This document shows positions 6,849 to 22,579 of a stretch of DNA of 64,000 nt, one piece after another (the first letter of the stretch is position 1; every line of letters starts with the position of its first letter). A program made the translations under genes and the position numbers. The notes under the pieces were generated by a model. That model was not told the DNA's origin. It was given only the letters and a program-made list of their open reading frames with translations, and searched no databases. The stretch is from positions 1-64,000 of the IMG/VR virus record IMGVR_UViG_3300032322_001765; one strand, written 5' to 3'.

Positions 6849-7278
6849 TTTTTAAAAACTGTAGTGCTTTTGACAACACTTCTTGTTGTTTGCTGTACGC
6901 ATCATATTCCCATGGCAAATTGATGTACTCGTCATATGGCATAGATTCTGATAAGTTTTTAGTAATTAAAACCCCATGCCAATAAAACTCACCTTTTCTA
7001 GTTATTTTCAAAACTTTGGTAAATTTTTGATGGACATGAATTAGTTCGTGGACAAGAATCAATGGCACTGACTCAATAGGTAAATCATGATTTATGCCAA
7101 TTCGATTCATATGAATCATATCAATGCCACCGTATACAGACTTGCCTAAATCGTATATACAAACTTCTATAATAGGCGGCAGTTCAATGATATTTGATAC
7201 TGCAAGTGCTATTTTATCAACGATATTTTCATATCGCCAATTGTAGTTATTATTTTGATAAAAATATTTTACGTTCAC
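6838..7278 (-). CDS. Zincin-like metallopeptidase
   Basis: HELIH (HExxH) and downstream PWEYDA. GTGA overlap with the upstream gene. Confidence 0.7.
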   Translation of the reverse strand: MNVKYFYQNNNYNWRYENIVDKIALAVSNIIELPPIIEVCIYDLGKSVYGGIDMIHMNRIGINHDLPIESVPLILVHELIHVHQKFTKVLKITRKGEFYWHGVLITKNLSESMPYDEYINLPWEYDAYSKQQEVLSKALQFLKIDK

Positions 7279-8084: not shown

Positions 8085-8164
8085 ATAATATTTATTATAC
8101 ATTACAACAGTAGAAATATGAAGCTATAAAGGTAAGGTAAAAGGTGATAAGTAGCCACTCTTTT

Positions 8165-8172
8165 TATAAATA
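8165..8172 (+). promoter_or_regulatory. T4-type late promoter box
   Basis: TATAAATA, 5 nt before ATG 8178. Confidence 0.7.
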
Positions 8173-8177
8173 TCGAG

Positions 8178-9305
8178 ATGACACTGGAAGAACTGGATGC
8201 TACAGCCAAACAAGCTTACTACAGTATGGATTTACCCACTGCTTTGCGCTGCTATGCTGAAGCATTTGTAAGATATCCTAAGTTGGCACTTGCCTACAAC
8301 AACTATGGAAATATTTTAAGAGAAACGGGTTATCCTGAAGAAGCATATGGGTTTTTGGAGACAGCCATGAAGCTTGACCCAACTGATAGAAATTTCCCAT
8401 TTAATTATGCTGTTGCTCATTTAGCAGCAGGAGATTTAGAAAAAGGGTGGGAACTTTTTGAGGCTCGATGGAGATTTAAACATCACGAACACACTTTAGA
8501 AGGATGGACTAAACCTAGATGGAATGGAGAATCGATAGCAGGCAAACGGTTACTTATCACCTGTGAAGAAGGTGACGGTGACAATATTCAATTTATAAGA
8601 TTTGTTGATCAACTAAGTGAACTTGATATTGAACCAATCATACAAACAGAAGTGCAATTAGAAAAATTATTTAAAAATAGTTTTCCTAAATTTACAGTAA
8701 TTAATAATACTCAAGAATTTGATGACTTTGATTATTGGACTCCTATTTTAAGTATTCCCAAATGTCTAAACATAACGTATGCTAATTTACCAAAAAGTAA
8801 AAAATATTTACAAGCATCAAACAAAAGTTTACAAAAATGGAAAAAAGTTATAGGCAAAAAAACTAAACCAATTATTGGATTATGTTGGAGCGGCACAAGC
8901 AAACGTTATCCGTTAGCTGAACTAATTAAATTATTGCCGGCTACAAAAGAATATGATTATGTTAATTTACAAATAAAATACACGGATGAAGAAAAAAGTA
9001 TTTTAGAAATTAATAATGTAAAGTGTTTTAAAGAAAATGTTAAGGATTGGGAAGATACGGCTGCATTAATTGATTACTGTGATATGGTTATAAGCATAGA
9101 CACAGGAATAGTACACTTAGCAGGATCGTTAAACAAACAAACAGTTTTGTTGTTAGACAAATACAAATCGTGTTGGCGTTGGTTATATGATAGTGAAAAG
9201 ACTTTATGGTATGATAGTTTAACCTTAATTAGACAAAGAGAACAGAATAATTATGATGAACAACTTTTTAGAGTATGGGAAACTATTAAACGTAACGGTC
9301 TGTAA
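8178..9305 (+). CDS. TPR-repeat glycosyltransferase (GT9/heptosyltransferase-like C-terminus)
   Basis: N-terminal TPRs (AYNNYGNIL, FNYAVAHL), W-x-G-E-x-x-x-GK...EEGDGDNIQF, and ISIDTGIVHLAG...CWRW. Confidence 0.8.
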   Translation: MTLEELDATAKQAYYSMDLPTALRCYAEAFVRYPKLALAYNNYGNILRETGYPEEAYGFLETAMKLDPTDRNFPFNYAVAHLAAGDLEKGWELFEARWRFKHHEHTLEGWTKPRWNGESIAGKRLLITCEEGDGDNIQFIRFVDQLSELDIEPIIQTEVQLEKLFKNSFPKFTVINNTQEFDDFDYWTPILSIPKCLNITYANLPKSKKYLQASNKSLQKWKKVIGKKTKPIIGLCWSGTSKRYPLAELIKLLPATKEYDYVNLQIKYTDEEKSILEINNVKCFKENVKDWEDTAALIDYCDMVISIDTGIVHLAGSLNKQTVLLLDKYKSCWRWLYDSEKTLWYDSLTLIRQREQNNYDEQLFRVWETIKRNGL

Positions 9306-9570
9306 ATATTCCTCGTACTGTGCTTCTTGCTAGTAATCTTTGTTCTTTAATAGATTCATAAAATTCATAATTTCTTATGAACTCTGTATCTTTTTCGTAA
9401 TTATAATTTCTTAATAACCTGTGATATTCTTGCAAAGTTAATAGTTTACTTAGTTCTTCCCAATTAACTTCTCTATTTTTTTCCGCATGCCATCTTTGAA
9501 CTTGGTCATTTCTTATTGACCATTGTGATACTTCATTTAGTAGTGTGGATGATATTCTAGGAATAGTCAT
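9286..9570 (-). CDS. Hypothetical protein
   Basis: Last gene of the long minus-strand run. Overlaps the convergent gene by 20 nt. Confidence 0.6.
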   Translation of the reverse strand: MTIPRISSTLLNEVSQWSIRNDQVQRWHAEKNREVNWEELSKLLTLQEYHRLLRNYNYEKDTEFIRNYEFYESIKEQRLLARSTVRGIFTDRYV

Positions 9571-9576
9571 TTGACA

Positions 9577-9711
9577 TTAATCGAACAAATCATCTTTTTT
9601 GTCAGGTTGAACCCATTCATTATATAATATAAAAAATGCTATACTAATTGCACCCATTAATAGGACACCAACTAAAAATCCGATTATAAAATACAATTGT
9701 TCAACACCCAT
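9577..9711 (-). CDS. 44-aa single-pass membrane protein (not in ORF track)
   Basis: MGVEQLYFIIGFLVGVLLMGAISIAFFILYNEWVQPDKKDDLFD. An ATAAATA box (9724-9718) lies 6 nt upstream. Confidence 0.65.
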   Translation of the reverse strand: MGVEQLYFIIGFLVGVLLMGAISIAFFILYNEWVQPDKKDDLFD

Positions 9712-9720
9712 AATAAGTAT

Positions 9721-12102
9721 TTATGACTGTAAATTATTGGTATTAGTGTAATGATTATAGAGCCATTCCCAATCGTAACTTAATTTTAATTTATCAAATT
9801 CACCATTAACTGTTTCATAGTAATCTACCGCATCTTTTGCACCTTTTAAAGACCACTGACTAAATTGCCCATCAGCTACACTTAACCAAACATCTAATCT
9901 ATATCTACTTTGTTCATCAATTACATTTAAAGAATTATATTTTAACTTGATGACTTCTCTAAACGCAGTTCGCCAAGTATCCCATTCGCTAGTATTATAA
10001 ATACCTATTCCAGAATTTATATTGACTAAAGTATGAGGGCTATCTAATGTAAAATCTAGTCCTTTGCCAGTAGTTGATAGGGTAAGATTTTTGTTATTTA
10101 AAACAACAGCCATATGTCCATATTCTAACCCATTTAAAATATTTGTGGCAGTGAAGATATAATGTTTTGAAGTATGAGTTCGTTTTGGTTGATAACTAAA
10201 ATCAAAATTAGGACTGACCTTACACTTGCTGTTTATTAAAAAGTACCAAGGAGTTAAAGCAGCGTTTGCTGCTGCATGTTGACTCGCAACTCTTCCTTTA
10301 ACGTTACTAACTTTTATTACTCTATTCGGCAAATGTTTAGTTACTTCTAATAAATGTTCGTAGCGGTCATTTTCACCTTGTTCTCCGTTACTTAAAAATA
10401 TAATATCTAATGGTTCATGACGATACCCTAAATTATGATATTTGACATATGGATAATCTTCTAATTTATCGTACATCTTTACTTTTGCATTCTTAGGAAT
10501 CAAAGCTGCAACATCATCTACAATATGAACGTGTGGTATTGAGTCATCTGAAATTATATTAGAGAAATTAAGATTAATATTGCCTATATAGGTATATGTG
10601 GTTTCTTCTTTGTATTCATTTATTCTATCAAAAATACTATCAATATACTCTACTTCGTTTATTTTTAAATCACATTTAATCTCATTTATAAATTTATTAC
10701 TTTGTGCATTTTTTGATTTATAAATTACTGTTGGCATATTTTCGCTAGAATGATACTGGTTACCAAACACGTAATTATATTTTTCTTCTGTATCATCTGG
10801 ATGCCAACTAAAATCAAAACTATCAATGTTAATTGGTTCAACAACTCTAAAATTACGTATATTTGGTAATTTGATTACTCGTTGATCCGAACAATATTTT
10901 TTTATAGCTACACTAGATTCAACATATATAGGACCGCCGGTTTTTTGCCATTGAGTTCCAAATTCATAATTCATCAACGGATCATGTGGATTAGGCACCC
11001 AGCCGTAATCGAACATTCTGTCATCAATATCATTAGGTATTTTCCAGTTTTCTTTATTTGGTAATAAAACTGCTTTTATATCTTTGATATATTTTTTATC
11101 AGTCGCATCTTTAACTCTATATTGGTAGGTTGGCATAGTTTCACCATCATACCATTGATTACCAAAAACATAGATGTAGGGAGGGTCGTGCGGGTTCGGC
11201 ACCCAACTTTGATCTATTACTGCATTATTAACTAATGGGCGCCAGCATCTACTATCAACATCAGGTAACAAAGTTGCTAACAAATCATGTACATATTTCT
11301 TTTCAATAGCTCCTTTTACCTTATACTGATAAGTAGGCATTGTTTTACTATCATACCATTGATTACCAAAAACATAAATGTACGGCGGCTCCGTTTCGTC
11401 TGGGTGCCATGAAAAATCAATTGTGCTGTTGCTAACTAAAGGTCTCCAACATCTATCATTACTGTCAGGTAATTTTTTTACTTTTTGAAAGTCAACATAC
11501 TTAACACCATGTGCATTTTCATTTATGTACGTAGGTCCTCCTGTCTTCTGCCATTGAGTTCCGAACTGCCAATTTAAGGGAGGTTCGTATGGATTAGGGC
11601 ACCAACTATAATCAAAGTTACTATCATCAATATTATCAGGAATTTGCCACTTATCTTTGTTTGATAATAAAGTAGCTTTTACATTGTATACATATTTCTT
11701 ATCTGTTGCACCTTTAACTCTATATTGGTATGTGGGCATTGTTTCACTATCATGCCATTGATTACCAAATACATAGATAAAGGGAGGGTCAGTATCGTCA
11801 GGATGCCAACTGTAATCAATAGTTGCATTGGCAATGAGAGGTCTCCAACATCGATTATTAGAATCAGGCAATCTTATTGCGTGTTGAAGATTTTGATATT
11901 TTATTCCTTCATGCTGCGGCACGATGAATTTAGGTCCGCCTGTCTTCTGCCACTGAGTTCCAAATTGATGTATGTAGGGTCTTTCGTAGATATAAGGGCG
12001 CCAATTAAAATCAAAGTTACTTGTATCTAATCCTTCTGGTATCTCCCAATAACCTTGTTCATTTAATTTTTTTCTGCGTTCTAGTTCTTCTTCACTATAC
12101 AT
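9721..12102 (-). CDS. Tandem-repeat protein with C-terminal GT-A-like domain
   Basis: Seven ~66-aa W/P-rich repeats (FD[FY]SWxP...FG[NT]QW), then a domain paralogous to 19771-20718. Confidence 0.75.
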   Translation of the reverse strand: MYSEEELERRKKLNEQGYWEIPEGLDTSNFDFNWRPYIYERPYIHQFGTQWQKTGGPKFIVPQHEGIKYQNLQHAIRLPDSNNRCWRPLIANATIDYSWHPDDTDPPFIYVFGNQWHDSETMPTYQYRVKGATDKKYVYNVKATLLSNKDKWQIPDNIDDSNFDYSWCPNPYEPPLNWQFGTQWQKTGGPTYINENAHGVKYVDFQKVKKLPDSNDRCWRPLVSNSTIDFSWHPDETEPPYIYVFGNQWYDSKTMPTYQYKVKGAIEKKYVHDLLATLLPDVDSRCWRPLVNNAVIDQSWVPNPHDPPYIYVFGNQWYDGETMPTYQYRVKDATDKKYIKDIKAVLLPNKENWKIPNDIDDRMFDYGWVPNPHDPLMNYEFGTQWQKTGGPIYVESSVAIKKYCSDQRVIKLPNIRNFRVVEPINIDSFDFSWHPDDTEEKYNYVFGNQYHSSENMPTVIYKSKNAQSNKFINEIKCDLKINEVEYIDSIFDRINEYKEETTYTYIGNINLNFSNIISDDSIPHVHIVDDVAALIPKNAKVKMYDKLEDYPYVKYHNLGYRHEPLDIIFLSNGEQGENDRYEHLLEVTKHLPNRVIKVSNVKGRVASQHAAANAALTPWYFLINSKCKVSPNFDFSYQPKRTHTSKHYIFTATNILNGLEYGHMAVVLNNKNLTLSTTGKGLDFTLDSPHTLVNINSGIGIYNTSEWDTWRTAFREVIKLKYNSLNVIDEQSRYRLDVWLSVADGQFSQWSLKGAKDAVDYYETVNGEFDKLKLSYDWEWLYNHYTNTNNLQS

Positions 12103-13586
12103 TAGCTACACACTTTTACACCATACAACGTTTCAAATCTATCTGCGTCACTTCTATCATTGACCATAGGTTCGCCTCGTATGTTTAATGATGTATTTAA
12201 GAGCATAGGACAACCAGTCATAATATACCATTTTTCTAGCAATTCTCTGATTCCCGAACCATCTTTTTTAACTGTCTGTACTCGACTGGTGCCGTCAACA
12301 TGGCATATAGCAGGAAAAGAATCAGGAAACTTACAATTAGCGATTGATTGCATATAAGGGCTATGATCCCACCCATTACAGAAATCAAAATACTGGTCAG
12401 CCATTTCATAAAGTATGACAGGGGCGAAGGGTCTAAATTGTTGTCTACGCTTAATTTCATTCACTTTGCCTTTTATATCAATTTGTCTAGGATCAGCCAG
12501 TAAACTTCTATTGCCCAATGCTCTAGGACCAAACTCTGCTTTTCCTGATGCAACACCAACTATTTTATTTTTAAGTAATTCATCTAATATATTATTAACA
12601 GGATACTTACCTTTTATATCATATCCTAAATATGCAGTGTTCCAATTAATAGCCATCCCATATGCAAGCGCAGCAGCACCTAAACTACTACCTGCATCAC
12701 CTGGATTAGGCATTATCCAAATATTATCAAAGTAATGTCCTAAATTTCTATTTGCTAAACAATTTAAGGCAACGCCGCCCATATAAACTAAATTACTACT
12801 AAAATTAAAATCCTTTGCTCTACGCATCACATTATAGATTAAATTTTCTGCTAAGTCTTGCGCACCTCTTGCAATTATAAATTCATCCATTGTGTCAAAC
12901 TCTTTATCATTTAATCCTAAATGTAAATTTTCTTTAAACTGAATTTCCCACTCATCGTTAATAAAATAATCTTTAAGTTGGTTTTTAAAAAGTTCACTAC
13001 TTACGCCATACGCACTCATACCCATTAAAATATATTCTTCTTCCATAGGTTCTAATCCGGCTTTTTGTGTCATTGCACTATAAAATAAACCTATACTATT
13101 TGGATAACCTTGACGCCATAACAACTTATATTTTGCAGCTCCCATATGGTTATACTCAGCAGCCCATATACTTATAGTGTCAAACTCTCCGATAGCGTCT
13201 ATTACAACTACAGTAGCTCTTTGAAAGGGGCTAGTTTGAAATCCGGCTGCGGCGTGACTTAAATGATGGTTATACGAAACAATTTTTTGATTAGATTTAA
13301 GTAATGGTTTAATTTGATCATTTAATACTTGTTTAGTTGTCAATTTATTAATTTGTAAACCTTCACCAGAATACAAACGTCTTAATTGTTTTTTAAAAGG
13401 ATTCTCATAATAAGCAATCGTGCTGATATTATAGTTTTGTACTTCTTGAATTAAATTTTCACAAATATTTTTATCATTTTTTATTTTACTATAACGCTCA
13501 CTATGCCCAGCAAAAACTATGCCACCTGTATTATTAATGACTGTTAATGCTGCATCATGAAAACCTGCACTAATACCAAGTATCAT
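12102..13586 (-). CDS. O-carbamoyltransferase, NodU/CmcH/TobZ family
   Basis: HDAA...ERYSK, HHLSH, GGVALNC, GDAG, EFGPRALGNRSLLADP, FRPFAP, HVDGTSRVQTV and LNTSLN are all present. Confidence 0.95.
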   Translation of the reverse strand: MILGISAGFHDAALTVINNTGGIVFAGHSERYSKIKNDKNICENLIQEVQNYNISTIAYYENPFKKQLRRLYSGEGLQINKLTTKQVLNDQIKPLLKSNQKIVSYNHHLSHAAAGFQTSPFQRATVVVIDAIGEFDTISIWAAEYNHMGAAKYKLLWRQGYPNSIGLFYSAMTQKAGLEPMEEEYILMGMSAYGVSSELFKNQLKDYFINDEWEIQFKENLHLGLNDKEFDTMDEFIIARGAQDLAENLIYNVMRRAKDFNFSSNLVYMGGVALNCLANRNLGHYFDNIWIMPNPGDAGSSLGAAALAYGMAINWNTAYLGYDIKGKYPVNNILDELLKNKIVGVASGKAEFGPRALGNRSLLADPRQIDIKGKVNEIKRRQQFRPFAPVILYEMADQYFDFCNGWDHSPYMQSIANCKFPDSFPAICHVDGTSRVQTVKKDGSGIRELLEKWYIMTGCPMLLNTSLNIRGEPMVNDRSDADRFETLYGVKVCS

Positions 13587-13687
13587 TTGTATATGAAGGG
13601 ATCTCTTTTTCGTAATTCTTTGAGTTTTTTTCGATATTTATATTCACGAATTACAAAATAGTACAATTCAATAATTTTTTTAATCAT
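13583..13687 (-). CDS. 34-aa basic peptide preceding the carbamoyltransferase (not in ORF track)
   Basis: MIKKIIELYYFVIREYKYRKKLKELRKRDPFIYK. ATGA overlap with 13586 and start overlapping the upstream stop. Confidence 0.75.
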   Translation of the reverse strand: MIKKIIELYYFVIREYKYRKKLKELRKRDPFIYK

Positions 13688-14540
13688 TTTTTATCCAATT
13701 AATCACCGTCTCCGCTACTTGCTTATTAAAATAAATACCCGGATGCGATCCATTGCCTTTTTTATCTTTTTGATTAAGTATATTTAGATCAATATCTCTA
13801 GCAGAATATTTGTTTATAAAATCCATGTCAAAAACTTTGGTTTTTACTATTGGTATTTGAAACTGTTCTAACGGTATATGTGTAATTTTTTTATGGTCTT
13901 TTAAAAATTGATCTAAATTACTTTGGTAAGTCGTAAATTCAAAAATTTTAATATTTAAAGACTTGCAAAGCAAGGAAATTGTCTTTCTATAAAAAGCAAA
14001 CCTATTATTAATATGTGAATTTTCTAGAAGAAAGCAGGTATATGCAGGTTTCCAAAATGGCGCCATAGGATTATTAACCAAATAAAACTCTAGTTTATCA
14101 TTAGTCCAGTAACAATTTCTTGTTAATTCAGGCCAATTTATAATAATTGCTTTAGGCCTACATTCATCATTTGATAGCATTTCTATAATATTTAAAAAAC
14201 TAAAATCAACTGATGCCCCACCTATTGCCCCGTTTACATAATCTAATCTCAAAGCTTTGCTAGTAATATAAGAAAATGTTTCTTCTAATGGTAATCCTGT
14301 GCCAGTTGTAAAACTGCAACCAAAAAATGCTATATAATTAGATAAATTTACTTCATCTAATTCTTTTTCCATTCTATATCCATAAGAATTAAACTTGTAT
14401 AGAATTTTACGATTAGACCATATCCATTTATCACCAAATTTTTCTTTATTTTTTACAAATTTTTCTTCCGGATCACCGGGATAAAATTCAGCAGATAAAT
14501 TTAATTCATTTTCATACGGAGATTTCAGTAAATAAGTCAT
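13680..14540 (-). CDS. SGNH/GDSL-like hydrolase or acyltransferase
   Basis: FFGCSFTTG (block I-like), GGASVD, RD...SHPG (block V-like). Likely start is ATG 14540. Confidence 0.6.
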   Translation of the reverse strand: MTYLLKSPYENELNLSAEFYPGDPEEKFVKNKEKFGDKWIWSNRKILYKFNSYGYRMEKELDEVNLSNYIAFFGCSFTTGTGLPLEETFSYITSKALRLDYVNGAIGGASVDFSFLNIIEMLSNDECRPKAIIINWPELTRNCYWTNDKLEFYLVNNPMAPFWKPAYTCFLLENSHINNRFAFYRKTISLLCKSLNIKIFEFTTYQSNLDQFLKDHKKITHIPLEQFQIPIVKTKVFDMDFINKYSARDIDLNILNQKDKKGNGSHPGIYFNKQVAETVINWIKND

Positions 14541-15684
14541 GTAATATTTTATAAAATTCAGAAAAAGTATTTTGATAGGTTTCGTTTCTTGATTCATCTA
14601 ACCATTTATTATATTTAATTCCTTGTTTAAACATTTCAACATTTTCATCTTTAGACACATGACTCAATAAATGCTGATAATTTTTAAGTTTATCAGTTAA
14701 TTTGTATTTTAGGGTTTCGGGTAAAATTCTTACGCTATAAAATTTTGGGTCATAAACAATATTTGATTGAACCTTAATATTTAAATTATTAAAATATTCC
14801 ATAAACTCAGGAACATAATAAATGTTCATCCAACTTATAGTCTGTGTTACACTTGTGTTTATCCAACTATTTTCTTTAAGTTTTTGTAAATTATATTCTA
14901 CATCATCCCATTTAGTTCCTTTTCTGATATAGTCGTTACGCTTACCTAAATCGTCAATACTACAATGTACTTCTACTTCTTTAAAGTTTTTCCAAATGTC
15001 TAATAATTGATTTGGTAGGTTAGACATATTAATACTATACCATAATTTTATTTGTTTGTTTAATCCATGTTCGATAAGTCTTTCTAAATAATTCCAATGT
15101 TTCTCTACTAAAGTAGGTTCACCCCCGTTTATATAAATTAACTCAACATCTTGACTGTGTGATAACAAGTCATTCCAAAATTCATCTGATTGTGTCCAAT
15201 TTGAATTAATCTTATTATCGTAAATTGTAACAAAATTTAATTCAGATTGAAGTTTATTGTACTCACTTATCCATTGAGTACTTGATGCCGGATTACATGT
15301 TCTACATTTTGCATTGCATAAGTTCCCTAACCTTAATTCAATAAACTTAAAATTAGGTTTTATAATTCCGTTTATATCATCATAGTCAGTGCCATATCGA
15401 GAAAGTTCTAATTTTCTTTTACTTTGTAAATTTAAATCTTCTTCTTGGTAACATCTTAAACATGCTTGTGGTTTTATTCCATTGCGCATTTCGTTACGTG
15501 TCTGTACAAAAAAATCGCTATTAACTATTTCTATAACCTTATTTTGATTTAAATTTAATTTTTTTCCGTTGGTTCTAGCAAAACTCATACTGTTAGTATG
15601 ATCACTAATGCAACATAATGAACTAGTTCCTTCAGGATGTGTTGCTAAATGCATCCATGGCAATGGACAAAAAGTGTCGGTCAT
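14512..15684 (-). CDS. Radical SAM protein with N-terminal Twitch-type domain
   Basis: CNAKCRTC (CxxxCxxC), INGGEP, and N-terminal C..W...LCC...CLRC. Confidence 0.9.
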   Translation of the reverse strand: MTDTFCPLPWMHLATHPEGTSSLCCISDHTNSMSFARTNGKKLNLNQNKVIEIVNSDFFVQTRNEMRNGIKPQACLRCYQEEDLNLQSKRKLELSRYGTDYDDINGIIKPNFKFIELRLGNLCNAKCRTCNPASSTQWISEYNKLQSELNFVTIYDNKINSNWTQSDEFWNDLLSHSQDVELIYINGGEPTLVEKHWNYLERLIEHGLNKQIKLWYSINMSNLPNQLLDIWKNFKEVEVHCSIDDLGKRNDYIRKGTKWDDVEYNLQKLKENSWINTSVTQTISWMNIYYVPEFMEYFNNLNIKVQSNIVYDPKFYSVRILPETLKYKLTDKLKNYQHLLSHVSKDENVEMFKQGIKYNKWLDESRNETYQNTFSEFYKILHDLFTEISV

Positions 15685-16988
15685 ATATTTTTATACCAAA
15701 TTAAAATATCTTTGTTTCTTGATAATATTGAAAGTAACATATCATTTTCGTTTCTGTGTAAGTCGATTTTGTTAAACCTACGCTTTCCAGCTTTTAAACC
15801 ATTTACATGGTCGCTATACTTTTCGTCAAATGTTTGCCGATACTTCATATCATTAAATGTTTCACTATAAACCTTTGTTAAATGGTTACCTTTTATATTT
15901 TCGTATTCTATAAGGTCATCTAACATCGGGTCTAAAATTCTATGGGGCACACACATGGGACTCATTAATACACTTGATTCAAAATCGAAAGTTATTTTTA
16001 CATAAGATTTTACATTAAGTTGAACCGCTAAATCAATCATGTTTTTCATATCTAGCATTCCAGGGAGGGTCAATGTCACATCTAACACCATTGCATCCAT
16101 ACCATATATGTCATTTAAAAATAATCCCTTTTTAAAATTAGTTAACCATTCATTATATTTTAGACCAGATCGAATATACTCCGCAACTTCACCCGTAGCA
16201 TCCATACTAGCACATATATTAACTTTTTTGAAATTAGGAAGTAAATCATATAGGTTTTGATTTTTGTATGATACACGACTTAGATTAGTATTATATCTAA
16301 CAACAACGTTTTTACTATGTCCTGATTCAACCAAATATTTCATAACTTCCCAATGTATATCATACATTAGTGGCTCTCCACCGACCCAATAAATTTCTTC
16401 AATAGTATTATTTTTTACAGCTTCCCATAGTTCACTTTCAACGACTGTAGTTTGAAAATTTTCAATTTGATTTTTATTTTCATGTACCATCCATCTGTCG
16501 ACCGACGGGTTCCACATGTTTAAAATTCTTTTTTCACTTTCCCAAGAACTTGACAATTGCTCCCCACACATTCTGCATTTAAAATTACAAAGGTTATGTA
16601 TTCTATAATCAAACGAAATTGGTTTCATTGTGGTATGACCAGTTTCATCTGTTGAACTTAATATTTCATCAATTTTATGTGGGAATAAATTTTCGGTAAA
16701 ATACTGTCGATAGGTATATAAATTCAATATATTATTATTACAGACTTGACATTCAGGAATGTTTTCTCCATTAAGTATTCTACGACGAACACTACGCATA
16801 TGTTCGCTATTCCAATGTTCTTCCAGTGTCGTTGGTTTATACTCGTTACTATCAGAACCTTCGCTATCAATATATTGTTTTTGCCAACTAGCCTGTTCAC
16901 GACTAGCACAGCATAATCTACGTTCGCTTTGTGGGCTTATGTAAGTATGTGTCCATGGTGCAACACAAAATGTCTTTTTATCAATCAT
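15681..16988 (-). CDS. Radical SAM protein with N-terminal Twitch-type domain
   Basis: CNFKCRMC, VGGEP, and N-terminal CVAPW...LCC...CQVC. Confidence 0.9.
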   Translation of the reverse strand: MIDKKTFCVAPWTHTYISPQSERRLCCASREQASWQKQYIDSEGSDSNEYKPTTLEEHWNSEHMRSVRRRILNGENIPECQVCNNNILNLYTYRQYFTENLFPHKIDEILSSTDETGHTTMKPISFDYRIHNLCNFKCRMCGEQLSSSWESEKRILNMWNPSVDRWMVHENKNQIENFQTTVVESELWEAVKNNTIEEIYWVGGEPLMYDIHWEVMKYLVESGHSKNVVVRYNTNLSRVSYKNQNLYDLLPNFKKVNICASMDATGEVAEYIRSGLKYNEWLTNFKKGLFLNDIYGMDAMVLDVTLTLPGMLDMKNMIDLAVQLNVKSYVKITFDFESSVLMSPMCVPHRILDPMLDDLIEYENIKGNHLTKVYSETFNDMKYRQTFDEKYSDHVNGLKAGKRRFNKIDLHRNENDMLLSILSRNKDILIWYKNI

Positions 16989-18408
16989 ATGTTGCTAATG
17001 GCTCATCTATATTTGTACCATCACCGCTATTCAATGGTTGGTAGGGTAATACTGTGGTTTCAATTGATTCTATCCAATCTGTTAAAATTTTAGGAAACAC
17101 ACTTAACGATTTGTTTCTACGTTGGTCGTATTCGGCGTAGAATGTTTTAAAATCTTTCCATAATAACTCTTTATTACTTGTCCTACGATGTGGGGCGTCA
17201 ACAACTTCTAAATAGTCTATCAAACGCTCTATGCTAGCTTTTTCACTCTCATGCCACAGTGGTTTGTTTTTTGCATTTTCATACCAATTACTTAAATTAT
17301 TTCTAACGTAATCTTTAATGTGATCAGGTAATGCTAATGGACTTTGAAAGCTCGGAAAACGCAATAGATTTAAGCTAACCGTGGGGCTCTTACAGTTTGG
17401 ATCTTCTTTAAGTTCATATATCTCGTCCAAGAAGTGATGAATACTGAATAAACATAAACTGTTTATTGTCATCATAACGTGAAGGCCTTCGAGATTTGCC
17501 TCAGATGCAATACGTTTAAAATTTTTCTTCCATAGTTTATATTCTAATCCATCACGAATATATTCAGCATGTTTACCCGTAGCTTCGCATGAAGTATACA
17601 AATGAAACCTTTTTATATTTTTTGTTTTTAAAATTAATTTGTCAATGATATCCTCTTTTGCAATTAAATTACTATTAACCGCAAAGCGCATATTACTATC
17701 CTGTTTCTCGAACCAATCGAACAACTTCCAAGTATTACCGGACATGAGTGGTTCGCCACCTGTAATACGTAGTTCTTCTAAACTTTCATTAAGACCATTA
17801 TCCCACCATTCCCAAAATGCTTGCACATAAGGATTTTCACTATCATCTTTGTAAGGCTGTGCCCATGATCCGTCTTGTTGAAAGGCGCCGGCGCCATCGC
17901 TAACTAAGTTTTGATAAGGTCCTTTTTTCTTTATGTCATTCGCCCAAGTTGTACTAAAACTTGCATTGCAATAACTACAAGCCAAATTACACACTCTATC
18001 AAAACTAATTTCAAAGGTTTTCAATAATACATCATGATCCCAAGGAGTCTGATTTGTTTTTGATATATCTTCATCACTATAGATAATTGTTTTAAATGTT
18101 CTATCAGAAACTTGGTCACCACCTATATCTTCAATTTTCCAACAATATTCACACTCTCTAGGTCTTTCACCTTCGAGCATCATTTTACGCATTAATTTTT
18201 TATGGTTAGTATTGTGTATAGCCGAAACATTTACTTTAACTTCTTCTATAGGAATTCTGTGAGCCGGCGGGTGATGACAGCTTGCAGTTGTACCAGACCC
18301 CAACCAAGTAGTTGCATTGTACCATTTTGCTGCACAATAACTTGGACTAATTTTATTGATTACTCTATTTCTATAGTCTGTCAAACTCTCATCAGGTTTT
18401 TTAGGCAT
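16981..18408 (-). CDS. Radical SAM protein with N-terminal Twitch-type domain (SCHH subtype)
   Basis: CNLACSYC, TGGEP, and N-terminal CAAKW...SCHHP...CEYCW. Confidence 0.9.
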   Translation of the reverse strand: MPKKPDESLTDYRNRVINKISPSYCAAKWYNATTWLGSGTTASCHHPPAHRIPIEEVKVNVSAIHNTNHKKLMRKMMLEGERPRECEYCWKIEDIGGDQVSDRTFKTIIYSDEDISKTNQTPWDHDVLLKTFEISFDRVCNLACSYCNASFSTTWANDIKKKGPYQNLVSDGAGAFQQDGSWAQPYKDDSENPYVQAFWEWWDNGLNESLEELRITGGEPLMSGNTWKLFDWFEKQDSNMRFAVNSNLIAKEDIIDKLILKTKNIKRFHLYTSCEATGKHAEYIRDGLEYKLWKKNFKRIASEANLEGLHVMMTINSLCLFSIHHFLDEIYELKEDPNCKSPTVSLNLLRFPSFQSPLALPDHIKDYVRNNLSNWYENAKNKPLWHESEKASIERLIDYLEVVDAPHRRTSNKELLWKDFKTFYAEYDQRRNKSLSVFPKILTDWIESIETTVLPYQPLNSGDGTNIDEPLATYD

Positions 18409-19771
18409 TTAATTCTTTCCAAAAGTTTTCATATTGGGGAAACGTACTTATAAAGTCTGTACCTCTCCGTAAATCGTATTCATTTATAAACTTCACAAAA
18501 TCTTCTTGTAAATCTATTCTTGTTTCATTGTTTGTAAGGTAATCGCAAAATCTTTTGATTTGATCCCATTCCTCAAGATACAGTCTTGCGTGTTCAGCTT
18601 TGATATAGTATTTTAGTAATAATTCTGACTTTGCTAAAATATCTTTGGCAAAATGCTCTCTTACATCTTTCGGAAGAATAAGGACATTTAAATGGGGAGG
18701 CCAACGTAGATAATTTATACTTACAGGAACTCTATTATTTGCACTCGTTAAATTAAATTCTTTTCGTAATTCAATAACCAAATCTAAAAAATCAGTAGTA
18801 GTTGGTAAACTTAGCACATTCATTGTGGTCATAATACTCACTGTAGAATCTGTATTACTTAAAATTTTTCTAACGTTATCTATCCATTTGTTGTAATTTA
18901 ATCCATATCTGCTGTATTCTGCTTGTTCACCTATCGATTCCAAACTTGTATAAATATCCACTCGTTTAACAGAATTGGATAGTTTATTAATTGTTTCTAT
19001 AAAATTATCTATCAATTTATCGTCTACACATAAATTAGAATTAATTGCTAATTCTAAGTTTGGTTTGGGATTATCGATAAGGTACGATAAAGTTTTTTGT
19101 ACATCTTTACTTAACAGCGGTTCACCACCTGTAATTCTAAACACTCGTAAATCGTCAATAATAGTAGGAAAATATTTATGGAAAGTATTTACATATGGAT
19201 TATCGTCACTATGCTTGTAAGGAAAACGTCCTACTTGTTTTAACCAATCTAGATTATGATTACTATTAAATGTAGGATAGGGCCCATGTCTTTCAATTTC
19301 TTCCATCCACTTGCTCGACACCTCAGGACTGCAATAACTACATTTAAAATTACACACATTACTGAATGAAACTTCTAAATAAGCAGGATTTATATCAGCA
19401 TATGGATCGCTACGTGCGACTTCATCTATTCTGTCCCACGCCCAATAATCTGCTGTTTTATAATGTCTATCACTAAAGTAAGATTTATCCAAATCTTCTA
19501 CGTTCCAACAATAGTCGCATTCTTGAGGTCGTTCGCCTTTTAACATTTTAACACGTTGTTCTTTTTTATAAGAACTGTTATGCAAGCTTGCTGGATTTTG
19601 TAATTCGCTTAATTGAATTTTATGTGGGCTGGGATGATGACAACTATGGTTATAACCATTTTGTAAATTTAAAGTTGTTTGCAACCACTTGGCACTACAA
19701 AAACTAGAACTAATATTGTTAATTTTTATAACTTTTTGTTTTAATTCCTCAATTCTCTGTTCGTTGCTCAT
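18401..19771 (-). CDS. Radical SAM protein with N-terminal Twitch-type domain (SCHH subtype)
   Basis: CNFKCSYC, TGGEP, and N-terminal CSAKW...SCHHP...CDYCW. The TAATG overlap supports a start at 19771. Confidence 0.9.
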   Translation of the reverse strand: MSNEQRIEELKQKVIKINNISSSFCSAKWLQTTLNLQNGYNHSCHHPSPHKIQLSELQNPASLHNSSYKKEQRVKMLKGERPQECDYCWNVEDLDKSYFSDRHYKTADYWAWDRIDEVARSDPYADINPAYLEVSFSNVCNFKCSYCSPEVSSKWMEEIERHGPYPTFNSNHNLDWLKQVGRFPYKHSDDNPYVNTFHKYFPTIIDDLRVFRITGGEPLLSKDVQKTLSYLIDNPKPNLELAINSNLCVDDKLIDNFIETINKLSNSVKRVDIYTSLESIGEQAEYSRYGLNYNKWIDNVRKILSNTDSTVSIMTTMNVLSLPTTTDFLDLVIELRKEFNLTSANNRVPVSINYLRWPPHLNVLILPKDVREHFAKDILAKSELLLKYYIKAEHARLYLEEWDQIKRFCDYLTNNETRIDLQEDFVKFINEYDLRRGTDFISTFPQYENFWKELNA

Positions 19772-20718
19772 TACCACCCTTCTATTTTTCTGATTACATC
19801 TATCTCTTTTACTAATGGTCCTAAATTATGTCTATCACTTTTATAATGCCTTTTAAAAAATTTACTTTGTTCAGAACTTAACATACATATTGGTAATCCT
19901 AATTTAGTATCAAGTAAATTTCCTATTCTGTCAATTTCATCTAATAAATTAACTTTTTCATGTTCTTCCCAAAGCTTTTCAAAATTATCAAACCATTGTA
20001 CTTCATTTGAATTCCAATCAGTGAGCATAGTCATGTACGTTCCTAATCTTGCACCATAAATACCCCATAAACCATTCTCAACGTCTGCACCTACATTATG
20101 CCAAATAGTTAAGTTATCAAGGTTTCTACTTACTACGCTTCGTTGAAAATCGTTTATGTTTGGTTTTGTTCCATTAATTAAACACATTTTCACTCCTTCT
20201 CTGAAACCTGCACGCCAAGCCTGAAATGGTCTGTAGTTAGGATAAGTAGTGCTATAACAATCGTTCATGCTCCAGTATAACCCATTTGTATAATCTAAAC
20301 AAAAATCTACTGTAGTGATATTATTGCCGTCACTTGCCTCATGAGTTTTCATATTTTCTACATAGGTTTTAGTCCAACTACTTATACCGCCGTTTCCATA
20401 TTGTAAGCCATTGATTATATTTTTTGCTTTCCAACGATACTGTGCTTTTTGATAACTTTCATCTTTGTCTGTAAAATCTAGTGTTAAATTAAAAAACTCA
20501 AAATTAGGTAAATTATCTCCGTCAATTAATATAAAACGTTCAGTATCACTTTCTTCTGCTGCGGCTTTATGTGCTGCGTCACTTCCTTTAACACCGTCTA
20601 CTCTACGTGCCCATGGTACCATGTTTTTAATTTTAACCCAAAATTCTTCTTTTTGTGGCTCATCATAACTTAAATAAATGCAATCTAAGTCTGCTATATC
20701 AACTTTATCATAACTCAT
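19771..20718 (-). CDS. GT-A-like glycosyltransferase
   Basis: YLSYDEP...VDGVKG..AAH..AA...FILIDGDN (DxD motif), NGLQYGNGG, WRAGFREGVK. Confidence 0.6.
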   Translation of the reverse strand: MSYDKVDIADLDCIYLSYDEPQKEEFWVKIKNMVPWARRVDGVKGSDAAHKAAAEESDTERFILIDGDNLPNFEFFNLTLDFTDKDESYQKAQYRWKAKNIINGLQYGNGGISSWTKTYVENMKTHEASDGNNITTVDFCLDYTNGLYWSMNDCYSTTYPNYRPFQAWRAGFREGVKMCLINGTKPNINDFQRSVVSRNLDNLTIWHNVGADVENGLWGIYGARLGTYMTMLTDWNSNEVQWFDNFEKLWEEHEKVNLLDEIDRIGNLLDTKLGLPICMLSSEQSKFFKRHYKSDRHNLGPLVKEIDVIRKIEGW

Positions 20719-20998
20719 ATATTTTTGCTTCCCATCTACAAACTTTACCTAAATAATCTTCATCCACAAGTATTGCATTATCTTCATATGCGCATCTTAC
20801 ACCATTGACATTTGGTACTACTTTAATAAAATTTATTTTACCTGCAAGCTTGACTATTTTTTGTTCGACGATTCGTATATCAAATCTACACTCTGCATAA
20901 GTTTGAGCATCGACCACTATATAATTTCCAGGCAAATCCTCACAAGTATAGAATAATACATCTCCGTTTTCATCGTAATATAATCTAAACTCTACCAT
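20708..20998 (-). CDS. Hypothetical protein
   Basis: Overlaps both neighbours in the coupled cluster. Confidence 0.7.
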   Translation of the reverse strand: MVEFRLYYDENGDVLFYTCEDLPGNYIVVDAQTYAECRFDIRIVEQKIVKLAGKINFIKVVPNVNGVRCAYEDNAILVDEDYLGKVCRWEAKIYEL

Positions 20999-21785
20999 AT
21001 TCTTCCTTTACAATCTTAGCAAAATCTTTATTATGATAGTGGAAAATATAAGTCTGTGGTATTTTTTGAATTCGAATTGGGTGAGTTAATTCATAAACTA
21101 ACTCTCGCTTCCAATCATCAGTAATCAAATTATTTACATATTGTTTCATATGAACGAAACTAAATCCATCGACGCAGGGCATAGTTGTATTTTCTACTCC
21201 CATAATATGACAAACTATACTATAAACCCAATCCGTAGTTGGTAACTCATCTACATTGCATTTAAATTTTTTAATTATATCATACCAATTTTCAAAAACA
21301 AACCGCACATTCTTAAAAAATAGTTCAGCAAATGGTGACTTTTTAAAATATGTTACTGCATTATAAACGTCGGGCAAATTATTATCATCAATAAACTTTC
21401 TGTAAAATCTTACATCACTTATTTGTTGTTTATAATCTCTTATGGTTGTACAAACACAAACATCCTTTAAACTCAACACATCAAATAGATAATCAATATC
21501 AGTGTTGACTATCATATCCGCTTCTAGTTTTATTGTATGATCATATGGGCTGGCTTCATAGACCTGCCAATCATTAACCAACTTCCATGCACTATTTGGT
21601 TCTAAGTCCCCGTATGGCAATTCGATAACATTGTCAAATGCAGCACACATACTTACGTCATTACTTAATAATGTTATGTTTGCTTTTGGATTTGCTTTTT
21701 TTAAACTCAAAGCAAGTGCGTCTGCACAATCAATATAATTTGTTTCTTTCGTATTTTGTGCTAAAACAAGATAACCTTTCGTCAT
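20985..21785 (-). CDS. GT-A-like sugar transferase paralogue (GT8/GT71-like)
   Basis: GYLVLA...SPYDHTIKLEADM (EAD at the DxD position). Paralogue of 21782-22579. Confidence 0.6.
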   Translation of the reverse strand: MTKGYLVLAQNTKETNYIDCADALALSLKKANPKANITLLSNDVSMCAAFDNVIELPYGDLEPNSAWKLVNDWQVYEASPYDHTIKLEADMIVNTDIDYLFDVLSLKDVCVCTTIRDYKQQISDVRFYRKFIDDNNLPDVYNAVTYFKKSPFAELFFKNVRFVFENWYDIIKKFKCNVDELPTTDWVYSIVCHIMGVENTTMPCVDGFSFVHMKQYVNNLITDDWKRELVYELTHPIRIQKIPQTYIFHYHNKDFAKIVKEEYGRV

Positions 21786-22579
21786 ACTATTTCCATAAAG
21801 TTTTGTTTATTAAGACAATGAAAATCCATATCTTTAACTATGATATAATTCTTTTTTATTTTTTCTTTATGAATTTTTTCTCTGTATATTTTATATTCTG
21901 TATTGTAAAGCTCTTGTCCAACTCTTTCGATTTTTAATTCTTTGTCTACATGTACAAGATTCCATGGCATATGGCATTCGGGATCATCTAAATGTCCATT
22001 AATAATTCTGTGCGCAATAGTTAGTGCATAGTCATTTCGATACATAAGACTGTACATTCCATATAATTCCGCATAATATCTATAGTTATGTTGAATCATT
22101 TTAATACATTCAAATAACTGTTTTGTTTTGTTCGTTTTTTTGAAAACAATAATTGTAGCCCACATCGTAGGGTAAGATATTGGGCTAATTAATTCATTTT
22201 CTATATTCTCCATTAAAAATTTTATGTTATTCGGAACGACATAATCAGTGCATATATTAAACAGTAAGTTAAGCGAATCACTATTAATTAAATAATCTGT
22301 ATCTAATAATAATGTTTCATCATACGGCGTTAAGTCGTATGCTTGATATCTACCTTTGTTAATCCAAACCGTTTTATTCTTTTTATTACTTTTATCAGAA
22401 TCAACTATAAAAACATTATCAAATTTATAATCATATTTCGCTATATCAGTATTAATATCTGTAACTACACTAGATTTTAAACCTAAAAAATGTTCCGCAC
22501 GTTTTGCGGTTGCGATAGCCATTTTAAAATAGTCAACACTATCAGTGTTGAACGCAAATAATAGAATGCCTCTGCTCAT
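21782..22579 (-). CDS. GT-A-like sugar transferase (GT8/GT71-like)
   Basis: GILLFA...TPYDETLLLDTDY (DxD) and YRNDYA. Confidence 0.65.
   Translation of the reverse strand: MSRGILLFAFNTDSVDYFKMAIATAKRAEHFLGLKSSVVTDINTDIAKYDYKFDNVFIVDSDKSNKKNKTVWINKGRYQAYDLTPYDETLLLDTDYLINSDSLNLLFNICTDYVVPNNIKFLMENIENELISPISYPTMWATIIVFKKTNKTKQLFECIKMIQHNYRYYAELYGMYSLMYRNDYALTIAHRIINGHLDDPECHMPWNLVHVDKELKIERVGQELYNTEYKIYREKIHKEKIKKNYIIVKDMDFHCLNKQNFMEIV

What the first reader, a model, noticed from the sequence alone, without database searches (positions are those of the whole stretch)
14512..19771. Four tandem radical SAM paralogues in two auxiliary-cluster subtypes
Two have an N-terminal C...CC...CxxC Twitch ligand set. 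The other two replace CC with SCHH, which may change auxiliary metal ligation. The 2+2 arrangement suggests sequential distinct reactions or heteromers rather than redundancy.
Basis: partly seen in the sequence, partly recalled or inferred. Interest (0 to 1): 0.6.

Follow-up and report, generated by a model that had tools for sequence, protein, structure and literature searches.

The report
Four radical SAM genes in phage sugar cassette
A large freshwater phage carries four old, separately conserved copies of an uncharacterised radical SAM enzyme family (with an iron-sulfur "twitch" domain at the front). They sit in one tight operon beside sugar-transfer genes, so they most likely act one after another to tailor a sugar rather than being spare copies.

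Summary
Four translationally coupled minus-strand genes, here called A (14512-15684), B (15681-16988), C (16981-18408) and D (18401-19771), all score 301-343 bits on NCBIfam NF033640, N_Twi_rSAM (cut-off 170). A and B carry C…CC…CxxC. C and D carry C…SCHH…CxxC.

- The two subtypes are real. SCH-type proteins form one supported clade, split into C and D lineages.
- Both subtypes keep the same four twitch cysteines, so a full Cys ligand set remains. The best-supported register puts His45 at the second Cys of "CC". Relatives carry Tyr, Phe, Val or Gln there, so it is not an obligatory ligand.
- Redundancy is excluded. Paralogues share 23-36% identity, each has orthologues at 50-79%, and lake variants run 32 synonymous to 8 non-synonymous.
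- D stands alone in 45 of 65 related viral loci, C follows it in 19, and B or A orthologues occur in 2-3. D therefore does not need C.
- A D-C heteromer got no support from a complex prediction. That is not evidence against it.

In 43 of 60 distinct viral loci and in two bacterial chromosomes, D adjoins glycosyltransferases, carbamoyltransferase, sugar epimerases or a polysaccharide exporter. The best reading is sequential radical tailoring of a sugar. The substrate is unknown. These are new members of a known but uncharacterised family.

The parts
18401..19771 (-). D: N_Twi radical SAM enzyme, SCHH subtype, 456 aa. It is the core gene of the cassette. Twitch Cys: C25 (19697-19699), SCHH 43-46 (19634-19645), CDYC 85-88 (19508-19519). 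Radical SAM CNFKCSYC 140-147 (19331-19354).
   Evidence: NF033640 at 331.7 bits. AF2 model pLDDT 93.8. More than 100 homologues at 61-79% identity. Present in all 80 related viral loci, and alone in 45 of the 65 with at least 6 kb downstream.
16981..18408 (-). C: N_Twi radical SAM enzyme, SCHH subtype, 475 aa, 36% identical to D. Twitch Cys: C25 (18334-18336), SCHH 43-46 (18271-18282), CEYC 86-89 (18142-18153). Radical SAM CNLACSYC 140-147 (17968-17991).
   Evidence: NF033640 at 301.2 bits. It forms its own clade, SH-aLRT 100. In viral loci it always lies within about 650 bp downstream of D. It overlaps the D stop by 8 nt.
15681..16988 (-). B: N_Twi radical SAM enzyme, CC subtype, 435 aa. Twitch Cys: C8 (16965-16967), CC 26-27 (16908-16913), CQVC 80-83 (16740-16751). 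Radical SAM CNFKCRMC 134-141 (16566-16589).
   Evidence: NF033640 at 304.4 bits. Pfam SPASM at residues 8-84 scores 21.2 bits, just under the 21.5 cut-off. It sits in a small long-branch CC clade, and its orthologues were seen only together with C.
14512..15684 (-). A: N_Twi radical SAM enzyme, CC subtype, 390 aa. Twitch Cys: C6 (15667-15669), CC 24-25 (15610-15615), CLRC 75-78 (15451-15462). Radical SAM CNAKCRTC 123-130 (15295-15318).
   Evidence: NF033640 at 342.7 bits. Pfam SPASM at residues 6-79 scores 24 bits (cut-off 21.5). AF2 model pLDDT 93.7. 1140 homologues at E <= 1e-10, the best at 52-72% identity.
19771..20718 (-). 315-aa protein directly upstream of D, probably a GT-A-type glycosyltransferase. 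It is the most constant neighbour of D in context type 1.
   Evidence: Found upstream of D in 27 of 60 distinct viral loci and in Ralstonia phage RsoM2USA. Invariant D66-x-D68 and other motifs. The nearest ESM Atlas cluster is named 'Glycosyltransferase 2-like', which is a lead only. No PDB or Pfam hit.
20985..21785 (-). 266-aa GT8-like (glycogenin-like) glycosyltransferase.
   Evidence: A family profile hits glycogenin-1 and glycogenin-2 at E 1.7e-6 over residues 4-106. Conserved in 36 loci.
21782..22579 (-). 265-aa protein with the same N-terminal pattern as the GT8-like neighbour. It is inferred to be a second GT-A transferase.
   Evidence: Conserved in 35 loci, always beside the GT8-like gene. 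Invariant D93-x-D95. No PDB hit, so this is an inference.
12102..13586 (-). NodU/CmcH-type O-carbamoyltransferase, 494 aa.
   Evidence: Pfam Carbam_trans_N at 3e-32 and Carbam_trans_C at 3e-48. PHROG 'Nol-like carbamoyltransferase' at 1.5e-95. It co-occurs with D in 13 loci and beside a D-type gene in a gammaproteobacterial chromosome.
13680..14597 (-). 305-aa protein of unknown function with a GCSFTTG motif, possibly SGNH-like. As called, the ORF overlaps the 3' end of A by 86 nt.
   Evidence: No family hit. Weak homologues follow the rSAM genes in several related loci. The SGNH reading rests only on my view of the motif.

Best explanation
The window comes from a jumbo T4-like phage of lakes. 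A, B, C and D are four functionally distinct members of the N_Twi_rSAM family, in which a twitch iron-sulfur domain lies in front of the radical SAM core.

How the genes are organised (shown):
- They form one translationally coupled operon at the end of a tail and baseplate gene block.
- They lie inside a sugar-handling cassette: two GT8-like transferases, a GT-A-like protein, then D, C, B, A, an unknown protein, and an O-carbamoyltransferase.

How each enzyme most likely works (inferred from family chemistry):
- The CX3CX2C cluster cleaves SAM to the 5'-deoxyadenosyl radical, which abstracts a hydrogen from a sugar carbon.
- The substrate is probably a nucleotide-sugar or a growing glycan.
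- The twitch [4Fe-4S] cluster has the same four Cys ligands in both subtypes: one Cys before the hairpin, the GX4C Cys, and CxxC. As in BtrN and anSME it probably accepts the electron from the substrate radical rather than binding substrate.

How the pathway is built (pattern shown, meaning inferred): D performs the core step, since it is the only copy present in most related phages. C, then B and A, add further tailoring steps. D+C and B+A behave as two exchangeable modules.

The subtype difference (speculative): the residue right after the ligand Cys is Cys in A and B and His in C and D. I take it to be an active-site or second-shell residue that steers the fate of the radical. A thiol could act as hydrogen donor, giving epimerisation or reduction. 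An imidazole could act as a base, giving oxidation or elimination.
For: - Family membership and motifs.
- Phage identity: baseplate wedge, hub, late sigma factor and SbcCD-like genes. The record is a 220,867-bp virus record estimated 61% complete. Holders are lake and freshwater metagenomes.
- Distinct, selected genes: 23-36% pairwise identity and a 32:8 synonymous to non-synonymous ratio with no indels. Orthologues of D reach 61-79% and of A 52-72%.
- Subtype clades.
- Four invariant Cys in the CX9-15GX4C...CX2C layout, matching the published twitch definition and the fully ligated BtrN cluster (PMC6231123).
- Register placing His45 at the second Cys of CC: GX4C is kept in both subtypes; the basal sequence L131 has S-C-C-H; two CC-lineage members keep only the GX4C Cys.
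- Non-ligand residues at that site (Tyr, Phe, Val, Gln).
- Nested occurrence: 45 loci with D alone, 19 with D+C, 2-3 with B or A.
- Modular exchange: in locus L017, B and A are 77% and 72% identical to the window's while D and C are 46% and 55%. In L013 and L014, D and C are 66-74% identical, but no B orthologue is present and the CC-type gene is only 28-29% identical to A.
- Sugar context in independent settings:
  - GT8-like profile hit.
  - A second viral context with a methyltransferase, a GT2, two GT7 plus lectin-domain proteins, and two NDP-sugar epimerase/dehydratases around D.
  - A Bacteriovorax 1.8-Mb contig with two GT4 genes and an ABC-2 exporter.
  - A gammaproteobacterial chromosome with carbamoyltransferase and a GT28-like gene.
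  - Overall, 43 of 60 distinct viral loci have transferases directly upstream.
- Nearest folds to the core include the sugar-acting twitch enzyme BlsE (Z 12.8), anSME and viperin.
Against: - No member of NF033640 has a known substrate, as far as my literature searches show. The sugar substrate rests on gene neighbourhood alone.
- In 12 of 60 distinct viral loci (context type 3) D sits among ClpP, DNA ligase, Bax1-I and UvdE genes with no recognisable transferase beside it.
- In several Bdellovibrionota MAGs, arrays of up to 9 family members lie in housekeeping surroundings, one next to the ATP synthase operon, without sugar genes.
- The structural neighbours are all at superfamily level (TM 0.3-0.36, Z about 12 on the core only) and also include RiPP maturases.
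- The motif register is not settled. Gap-free MAFFT alignments instead pair Ser43 with the first Cys of CC.
- The Cys-versus-His role is speculation.
Confidence: 0.45

Rival explanations
1. Peptide or protein maturases. The four enzymes cross-link or epimerise residues of a phage protein, for example a tail or fibre protein encoded upstream, or of a small peptide, as most characterised SPASM/twitch enzymes do.
For: - The cassette directly follows tail and baseplate structural genes on the same strand. In RsoM2USA the same order follows the tail sheath and a confirmed virion protein.
- Top Foldseek and VIA matches include SkfB, SuiB, CteB, ChlB and EpeE.
- Bdellovibrionota arrays lack sugar genes.
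Against: - No RiPP recognition element or PqqD-like domain was found in any of the four.
- No short Cys-rich or repeat-type precursor gene is conserved beside D across the three viral contexts.
- Glycosyltransferases, not peptidases or exporters of peptides, are the recurrent neighbours.
- The fold matches are at superfamily level only.
Confidence: 0.15
2. Nucleotide or DNA modification. The enzymes act on a free nucleotide or on phage DNA (hypermodified bases, or viperin/MoaA-like chemistry), and the transferases decorate DNA rather than a glycan.
For: - Weak family-level hits to viperin and MoaA models, and viperin is among the best fold matches.
- In one relative D lies next to ThyX.
- In context type 3 it lies among DNA ligase and UvdE genes.
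- T4-like phages are known to glycosylate DNA (my own knowledge).
Against: - The matches to viperin and MoaA are far below cut-off (16-38 bits against 180-284).
- Bacterial contexts with an ABC-2 polysaccharide exporter and GT4 genes point to an exported glycan, not DNA.
- No hydroxymethylase, kinase or DNA transferase typical of base hypermodification was seen in the cassette.
Confidence: 0.12
3. Heteromeric enzyme. D and C (and perhaps B and A) form obligate hetero-oligomers, one subunit catalytic and the other structural or electron-transferring.
For: - In viral loci C is always within about 650 bp downstream of D, and here the two overlap by 8 nt.
- D+C and B+A are inherited as pairs.
Against: - D occurs without C in 45 of 65 loci with enough flank. 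C-clade genes occur without a D-clade gene in some Bdellovibrionota loci.
- All four keep complete radical SAM, GGEP and twitch motifs, so none looks like a degenerate partner.
Confidence: 0.1
4. Redundant recent duplicates with no separate roles.
For: They are tandem genes of one family in one operon.
Against: - Only 23-36% pairwise identity.
- Each falls in a different clade with its own orthologues in other phages and in bacteria.
- Purifying selection is seen in natural variants.
Confidence: 0.02

Closest known systems
NCBIfam NF033640 N_Twi_rSAM (twitch domain-containing radical SAM protein; uncharacterised)
   Same: All four proteins match end to end (profile positions about 1-397 of 398) at 301-343 bits against a cut-off of 170. 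The N-terminal twitch Cys pattern is followed by CX3CX2C and GGEP.
   Different: C and D belong to a separate, well-supported subclade. It lacks the second Cys of the CC doublet, carries S-C-H-[HL]-P instead, is about 60-80 residues longer, and gets no Pfam SPASM hit. No biochemical function is attached to the family, so membership gives no function.
BtrN (butirosin 2-deoxy-scyllo-inosamine dehydrogenase), the prototype twitch enzyme acting on a carbohydrate-like substrate
   Same: One auxiliary cluster is bound by one Cys before a beta-hairpin, one after it, and two after the following helix. BtrN's cluster is fully Cys-ligated (PMC6231123). The same four-Cys layout is invariant here. The substrate is probably a sugar.
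   Different: In BtrN the twitch domain is C-terminal, whereas here it precedes the core. No specific sequence or fold match to BtrN was obtained. Activity is untested.
BlsE, anSME and viperin (best structural neighbours of the core)
   Same: A partial TIM-barrel radical SAM core. VIA-align gives Z 12.8, 12.7 and 12.2 over about 185-206 residues of model A (residues 111-349). BlsE is a twitch enzyme acting on a nucleoside sugar.
   Different: Identity is 16-17%. Only the core aligns, and the N-terminal twitch and C-terminal helical region are not covered. TM scores are 0.27-0.36. This is resemblance at superfamily level only.
Ralstonia jumbo phage RsoM2USA ORF349-354 (all annotated hypothetical)
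   Same: It is the only cultured phage among 50,697 records with a D homologue (45% identity, 98% coverage). The upstream order matches: the 315-aa partner, two GT8-like genes and a small ORF, downstream of tail genes.
   Different: It has D only, with no C, B or A orthologues and no carbamoyltransferase in the locus. The paper on this phage does not mention these genes.

Membership tests
Radical SAM superfamily | CX3CX2C motif for the SAM-binding [4Fe-4S] cluster, plus a GGE-type SAM-binding motif, in a partial TIM barrel | tested here: met
   CNAKCRTC, CNFKCRMC, CNLACSYC and CNFKCSYC, with GGEP in all four. Pfam PF04055 hits score 24-34 bits; A and D are over the cut-off, B and C under it. 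The AF2 cores align to solved radical SAM enzymes at Z about 12.
NCBIfam NF033640 N_Twi_rSAM | Full-length match to the family model above its curated cut-off (170 bits) | tested here: met
   A 342.7, B 304.4, C 301.2 and D 331.7 bits, covering profile positions about 1-397 of 398. The six-frame genome search gives the same result.
Twitch (truncated SPASM) domain | CX9-15GX4C around a beta-hairpin, then a helix, then further Cys, giving the ligands for one auxiliary cluster (definition in PMC6231123) | tested here: met
   - A: C6-x12-G19-x4-C24 ... C75xxC78.
- D: C25-x13-G39-x4-C44 ... C85xxC88.
- B has Ser in place of the Gly.
- The AF2 models show the hairpin (A strands 12-15 and 21-22; D strands 31-35 and 40-42) and the following helices.
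- The Pfam SPASM model hits only A (24.0 bits, over the cut-off) and B (21.2 bits, just under), not C or D.
Twitch (truncated SPASM) domain | Actually binds one auxiliary Fe-S cluster; its type and ligation (four Cys, or an open or non-Cys site) | not testable with these tools
   Needs reconstitution with EPR or Moessbauer, or a crystal structure. Sequence shows only that four Cys are invariant in both subtypes. Model coordinates were not returned, so the His geometry could not be measured.
RiPP-maturing SPASM/twitch enzymes (sactisynthases, ranthipeptide and streptide maturases) | An N-terminal RiPP recognition element and an adjacent precursor peptide gene | tested here: not met
   No RRE or PqqD-type domain in the Pfam or NCBIfam scans. 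No conserved short precursor-like ORF is shared by the three viral contexts of D. Absence of a precursor is hard to prove.
Viperin / MoaA-type nucleotide-acting radical SAM enzymes | A match to the equivalog models above cut-off | tested here: not met
   Viperin model NF038283 scores 16-25 bits (cut-off 180). MoaA TIGR02666 scores 26-38 bits (cut-off 284).

The most novel reading that the evidence does not exclude
This lake jumbo phage runs a large radical-chemistry workshop. It encodes 17 radical SAM proteins and its own IscU and IscA iron-sulfur assembly proteins. In the most novel reading, the D-C-B-A cassette with its transferases builds a radical-tailored sugar of a kind not yet described, placed on the virion or on the infected cell surface. 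That would give the first function for the N_Twi family. The single Cys-to-His switch next to the twitch ligand would decide the reaction type, for example epimerase versus dehydrogenase or dehydratase.
Probability: 0.2. Interest if true: 0.75.

Novelty: new member of a known kind. Interest (0 to 1): 0.5.

Why it matters
- N_Twi_rSAM is a curated but biochemically blank family. A word-index search with D found at least 5,805 proteins at E <= 1e-5 among the 8,000 candidates scored, and the nearest ESM Atlas clusters are 88-100% viral.
- The family has two lineages differing at one residue beside an Fe-S ligand. D is the core, and C, B and A are add-ons. The genes keep company with glycosyltransferases in phages and in predatory bacteria. 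Together these give enzymologists a defined set of four proteins, a cultured handle (RsoM2USA ORF349) and a concrete substrate class to try.
- If phage virions or infected cells carry radical-tailored sugars, that bears on host recognition and on defence evasion in freshwater phage-host systems.

Tried and rejected
- **Megablast of the 5.3-kb stretch against 50,697 phage records:** no match.
- **Literature searches** for an N-terminal twitch radical SAM, for the family name, and for radical SAM with jumbo phage and glycosyltransferase: nothing on this family. The RsoM2USA paper does not mention these genes.
- **Single-sequence scan of 185,579 species genomes with D:** nothing. The profile scan then found Bdellovibrionota and other MAGs.
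- **Complex prediction of D with C:** score 0.00 in two runs, verdict 'no answer'. This is neither support nor evidence against binding.
not possible, because structure prediction returns no coordinates and none appear in the Python box.
- **Foldseek and VIA-align against the PDB:** only radical SAM cores at superfamily level, no specific relative.
- **Profile-profile comparison of the neighbours of D in the three viral contexts:** no remote homology between them; all probabilities are under 3% (a first attempt timed out).
- **PDB profile searches** for the 315-aa partner, the 265-aa protein and two context-3 neighbours: nothing significant.
- **Sigma-70 promoter and terminator scan of 9-27.5 kb:** counts equal to shuffled expectation, so uninformative.
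- **My first reading of the DSSP strings** as direct proof of the hairpin register was dropped. The strand boundaries allow both registers. The register now rests on GX4C, L131 and the single-Cys variants.
- **** was a mistyped request and gave no data.


Full report
**What is there.** Window positions 14512-19771 hold four consecutive minus-strand genes. In the order of transcription I call them D (18401-19771, 456 aa), C (16981-18408, 475 aa), B (15681-16988, 435 aa) and A (14512-15684, 390 aa). Their ends overlap by 8, 8 and 4 nt (ATGCCTAA, ATGATTGA, ATGA), which is the usual sign of one translationally coupled operon. Each has a CX3CX2C radical SAM motif and a GGEP motif. All four match the NCBIfam model NF033640, 'twitch domain-containing radical SAM protein' (N_Twi_rSAM), from end to end at 343, 304, 301 and 332 bits against a cut-off of 170. 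A has C6, C24-C25 and C75xxC78. B has C8, C26-C27 and C80xxC83. C and D have C25, S43-C44-H45-H46, and C86xxC89 (C) or C85xxC88 (D).

**Where it lies.** The window is the first 64 kb of a 220,867-bp IMG/VR virus record, estimated 61% complete. Downstream on the same strand lie a 5,694-aa ORF, a baseplate wedge, a hub/lysozyme and virion proteins. On the other strand lie a T4-type late sigma factor and SbcCD-like genes. The wedge protein is 31-35% identical to those of GAP32-, CBB-, XbC2- and Atu_ph07-type jumbo phages. Near-identical DNA occurs in lake and freshwater metagenomes from several studies. One contig of the probable source run spans the four genes. Small pieces from three other runs lie on all four genes with substitutions only and no indels. 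Of the 40 best-supported differences, 32 are synonymous and 8 are not. The genes are therefore real, intact and under purifying selection.

**Are the two subtypes real?**
- Pairwise identities are 36% for C-D, 26% for A-B and 23-26% across the subtypes.
- D has more than 100 listed homologues at 61-79% identity and nearly the same length. A has homologues at 52-72%. These are old, separately conserved lineages.
- I collected 207 family members from 80 viral loci, RsoM2USA, 42 bacterial loci and the whole phage record. I reduced them to 104 rows and built a maximum-likelihood tree.
- All 59 SCH-type rows fall on one side of a branch with SH-aLRT 95. Support is 100 if one basal sequence with S-C-C-H is included.
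- Inside this group there is a C clade (13 rows, support 100) and a D clade (47 rows). A and B sit in two different subclades of the CC-type remainder, and B's clade is small and on a long branch.
- This was a quick search with the LG+G4 model, because the mixture model did not finish in time. The motif columns were not removed, but they are 2-3 of 474 columns.
The subtypes separate.

**Does SCHH change the ligation of the auxiliary cluster?** Probably not.
- The twitch domain is defined by one Cys before a beta-hairpin, CX9-15GX4C, then a helix and two more Cys. BtrN ligates its auxiliary [4Fe-4S] cluster fully with four such Cys (PMC6231123).
- Exactly four Cys in this layout are invariant across both subtypes. 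The AF2 models of D (pLDDT 93.8) and A (pLDDT 93.7) show the hairpin and helices in the expected order.
- So what differs is a fifth position, not one of the four ligands.
- Which residue of SCHH matches which Cys of CC depends on the register. Gap-free MAFFT alignments pair Ser43 with the first Cys and Cys44 with the second.
- Three observations favour the other register, in which Cys44 is the GX4C cysteine and His45 stands where the second Cys of CC stands:
  - GX4C is kept in both subtypes. In CC types the Gly is at +13 and the Cys at +18 from the first Cys. In SCH types they are at +14 and +19.
  - The basal sequence L131 has G-x4-C-C-H, that is S18-C19-C20-H21.
  - Two CC-lineage members with a single Cys keep the +18 (GX4C) Cys and have Val or Gln at +19.
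- In either register, the position occupied by His45 is Tyr or Phe in several bacterial D-clade proteins (SCYL, SCFL, SCYH). The second His is Leu in part of the C clade. Residues that cannot bind iron are tolerated there.
- In phage D orthologues, however, HSCHHP is invariant in 84 of 84 ORFs, so the histidines matter for something.
- I could not measure their geometry, because no coordinates are returned.
- My reading, marked as inference: this is an active-site or second-shell position next to the cluster, not a ligand swap.

**Sequential steps, heteromers or redundancy?**
- Redundancy is excluded by the points above.
- Among 65 related viral loci with at least 6 kb downstream of D, 45 have D alone and 19 have D followed within about 650 bp by a C orthologue. 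Only 2-3 have B or A orthologues, always together with C.
- These loci were fetched with D as the query, so they cannot show C without D. In Bdellovibrionota loci, C-clade genes do occur without a D-clade gene.
- In locus L017, B and A are 77% and 72% identical to the window's, while D and C are only 46% and 55% identical. In L013 and L014 the reverse holds. D+C and B+A thus behave as two exchangeable modules.
- A Pseudobdellovibrio contig carries C, A, B and another C-type gene in tandem.
- This pattern fits a core step (D) with optional added steps.
- It does not fit an obligate D-C complex. The complex prediction gave no support either way.

**What pathway?** D occurs in three unrelated viral neighbourhoods.
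- **Type 1** (27 of 60 distinct loci, including the window and Ralstonia phage RsoM2USA). The order is virion proteins, a small ORF, a 265-aa protein, a 266-aa protein, a 315-aa protein, then D. The profile of the 266-aa protein hits glycogenin (GT8) at E 1.7e-6. The 315-aa protein has DxD-type invariants and a 'GT2-like' Atlas neighbour. A carbamoyltransferase often follows.
- **Type 2** (16 of 60). D is flanked by a methyltransferase, a GT2-like protein, two GT7 proteins with lectin domains, and two NDP-sugar epimerase/dehydratases.
- **Type 3** (12 of 60). The neighbours are ClpP, DNA ligase, Bax1-I, unknown proteins and UvdE, with no evident sugar gene beside D.
- **Bacteria.** On a 1.8-Mb Bacteriovorax contig, D-type genes sit next to two GT4 genes, an ABC-2 exporter pair and another radical SAM/SPASM gene. 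On a 2.6-Mb gammaproteobacterial contig they sit next to a carbamoyltransferase, DUF6071 and a GT28-like gene.
- Four independent sugar-related settings make a carbohydrate substrate the best guess. Type 3 and some gene arrays in Bdellovibrionota are the main counter-evidence.
- Fold comparison gives only superfamily-level neighbours: BlsE, anSME, viperin, SkfB, SuiB and MoaA.

**Comparison with what is known, and novelty.**
- The four proteins are clear members of a curated family whose function is unknown. I found no paper on it.
- The only cultured phage with a D homologue is RsoM2USA (45% identity). There it and its neighbours are annotated as hypothetical and are not discussed.
- I therefore rate the finding as new members of a known kind.
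- New here are the definition of the SCH subclade, its most likely register, the nested D > C > B/A pattern and the link to sugar genes.

**Limits.**
- The substrate, the cluster content and the oligomeric state are untested.
- The tree is a quick search.
- The loci were gathered with D and C as bait, which biases the co-occurrence counts.
- MAG taxonomy is as deposited, and some 'bacterial' contigs are clearly phage.

Noticed in passing
Same virus record outside the window: G000:C1 about 153,000-179,000 (loci L174, L175): A second radical SAM island with 13 more CX3CX2C proteins, giving 17 in the 221-kb record. It holds three further N_Twi members (all CC type), three B12-binding radical SAM proteins (PhpK-, ladderane-lipid- and KedN5-like), two TrsS/Tes-like proteins, several short radical SAM proteins, and a class-III aminotransferase.
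   Followed up: partly
Same record, G000:C1:147364-147744 and 147877-148242 (L174:1364-1741 and 1877-2239): The phage encodes its own Fe-S assembly proteins: an IscU/NifU-type scaffold (PF01592, E 6e-52) and an A-type carrier (PF01521, E 8e-19). This fits the heavy load of Fe-S enzymes.
   Followed up: partly
window 26929-44013 (-): A single 5,694-aa ORF lies between the sugar cassette and the baseplate wedge gene (44031-47381). It is presumably a giant virion or fibre protein and a candidate acceptor for the cassette's product. It was not analysed.
   Followed up: no
window 7275-8102 (-) and 8178-9305 (+): A D-Ala-D-Ala carboxypeptidase (Peptidase_S11, E 1e-35) and a TPR plus GT9 (heptosyltransferase-like) protein flank the cassette. 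These are further cell-envelope or sugar genes in a phage.
   Followed up: no
Loci L104, L110, L112, L127 (Bdellovibrionota MAG contigs): Tandem arrays of 4 to 9 N_Twi radical SAM genes in predatory bacteria, some in housekeeping surroundings (L112 lies beside the ATP synthase operon). L127 has C-, A-, B- and C-type genes in a row.
   Followed up: partly
Loci L094 (Fischerella MAG), L100 (Neomarinimicrobiota MAG), L107 (Flavobacteriaceae MAG): These 'bacterial' contigs carry the phage-type cassette together with phage structural genes homologous to the window's. They are probably phage contigs binned into MAGs.
   Followed up: no
window 13680-14597 (-) against 14512-15684 (-): The 305-aa ORF as called overlaps the 3' end of A by 86 nt, so its true start is probably a later ATG. 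It has no family match.
   Followed up: no
Locus L009/L010 (ENA lake or sea metagenome scaffolds), genes at 7821-8966 and 9021-9890: In a relative with D at 64% and C at 68% identity, the pair lies next to ThyX and an Mtd_N-domain protein (the tropism determinant of diversity-generating retroelements). A Zn-ribbon radical SAM gene lies nearby.
   Followed up: no
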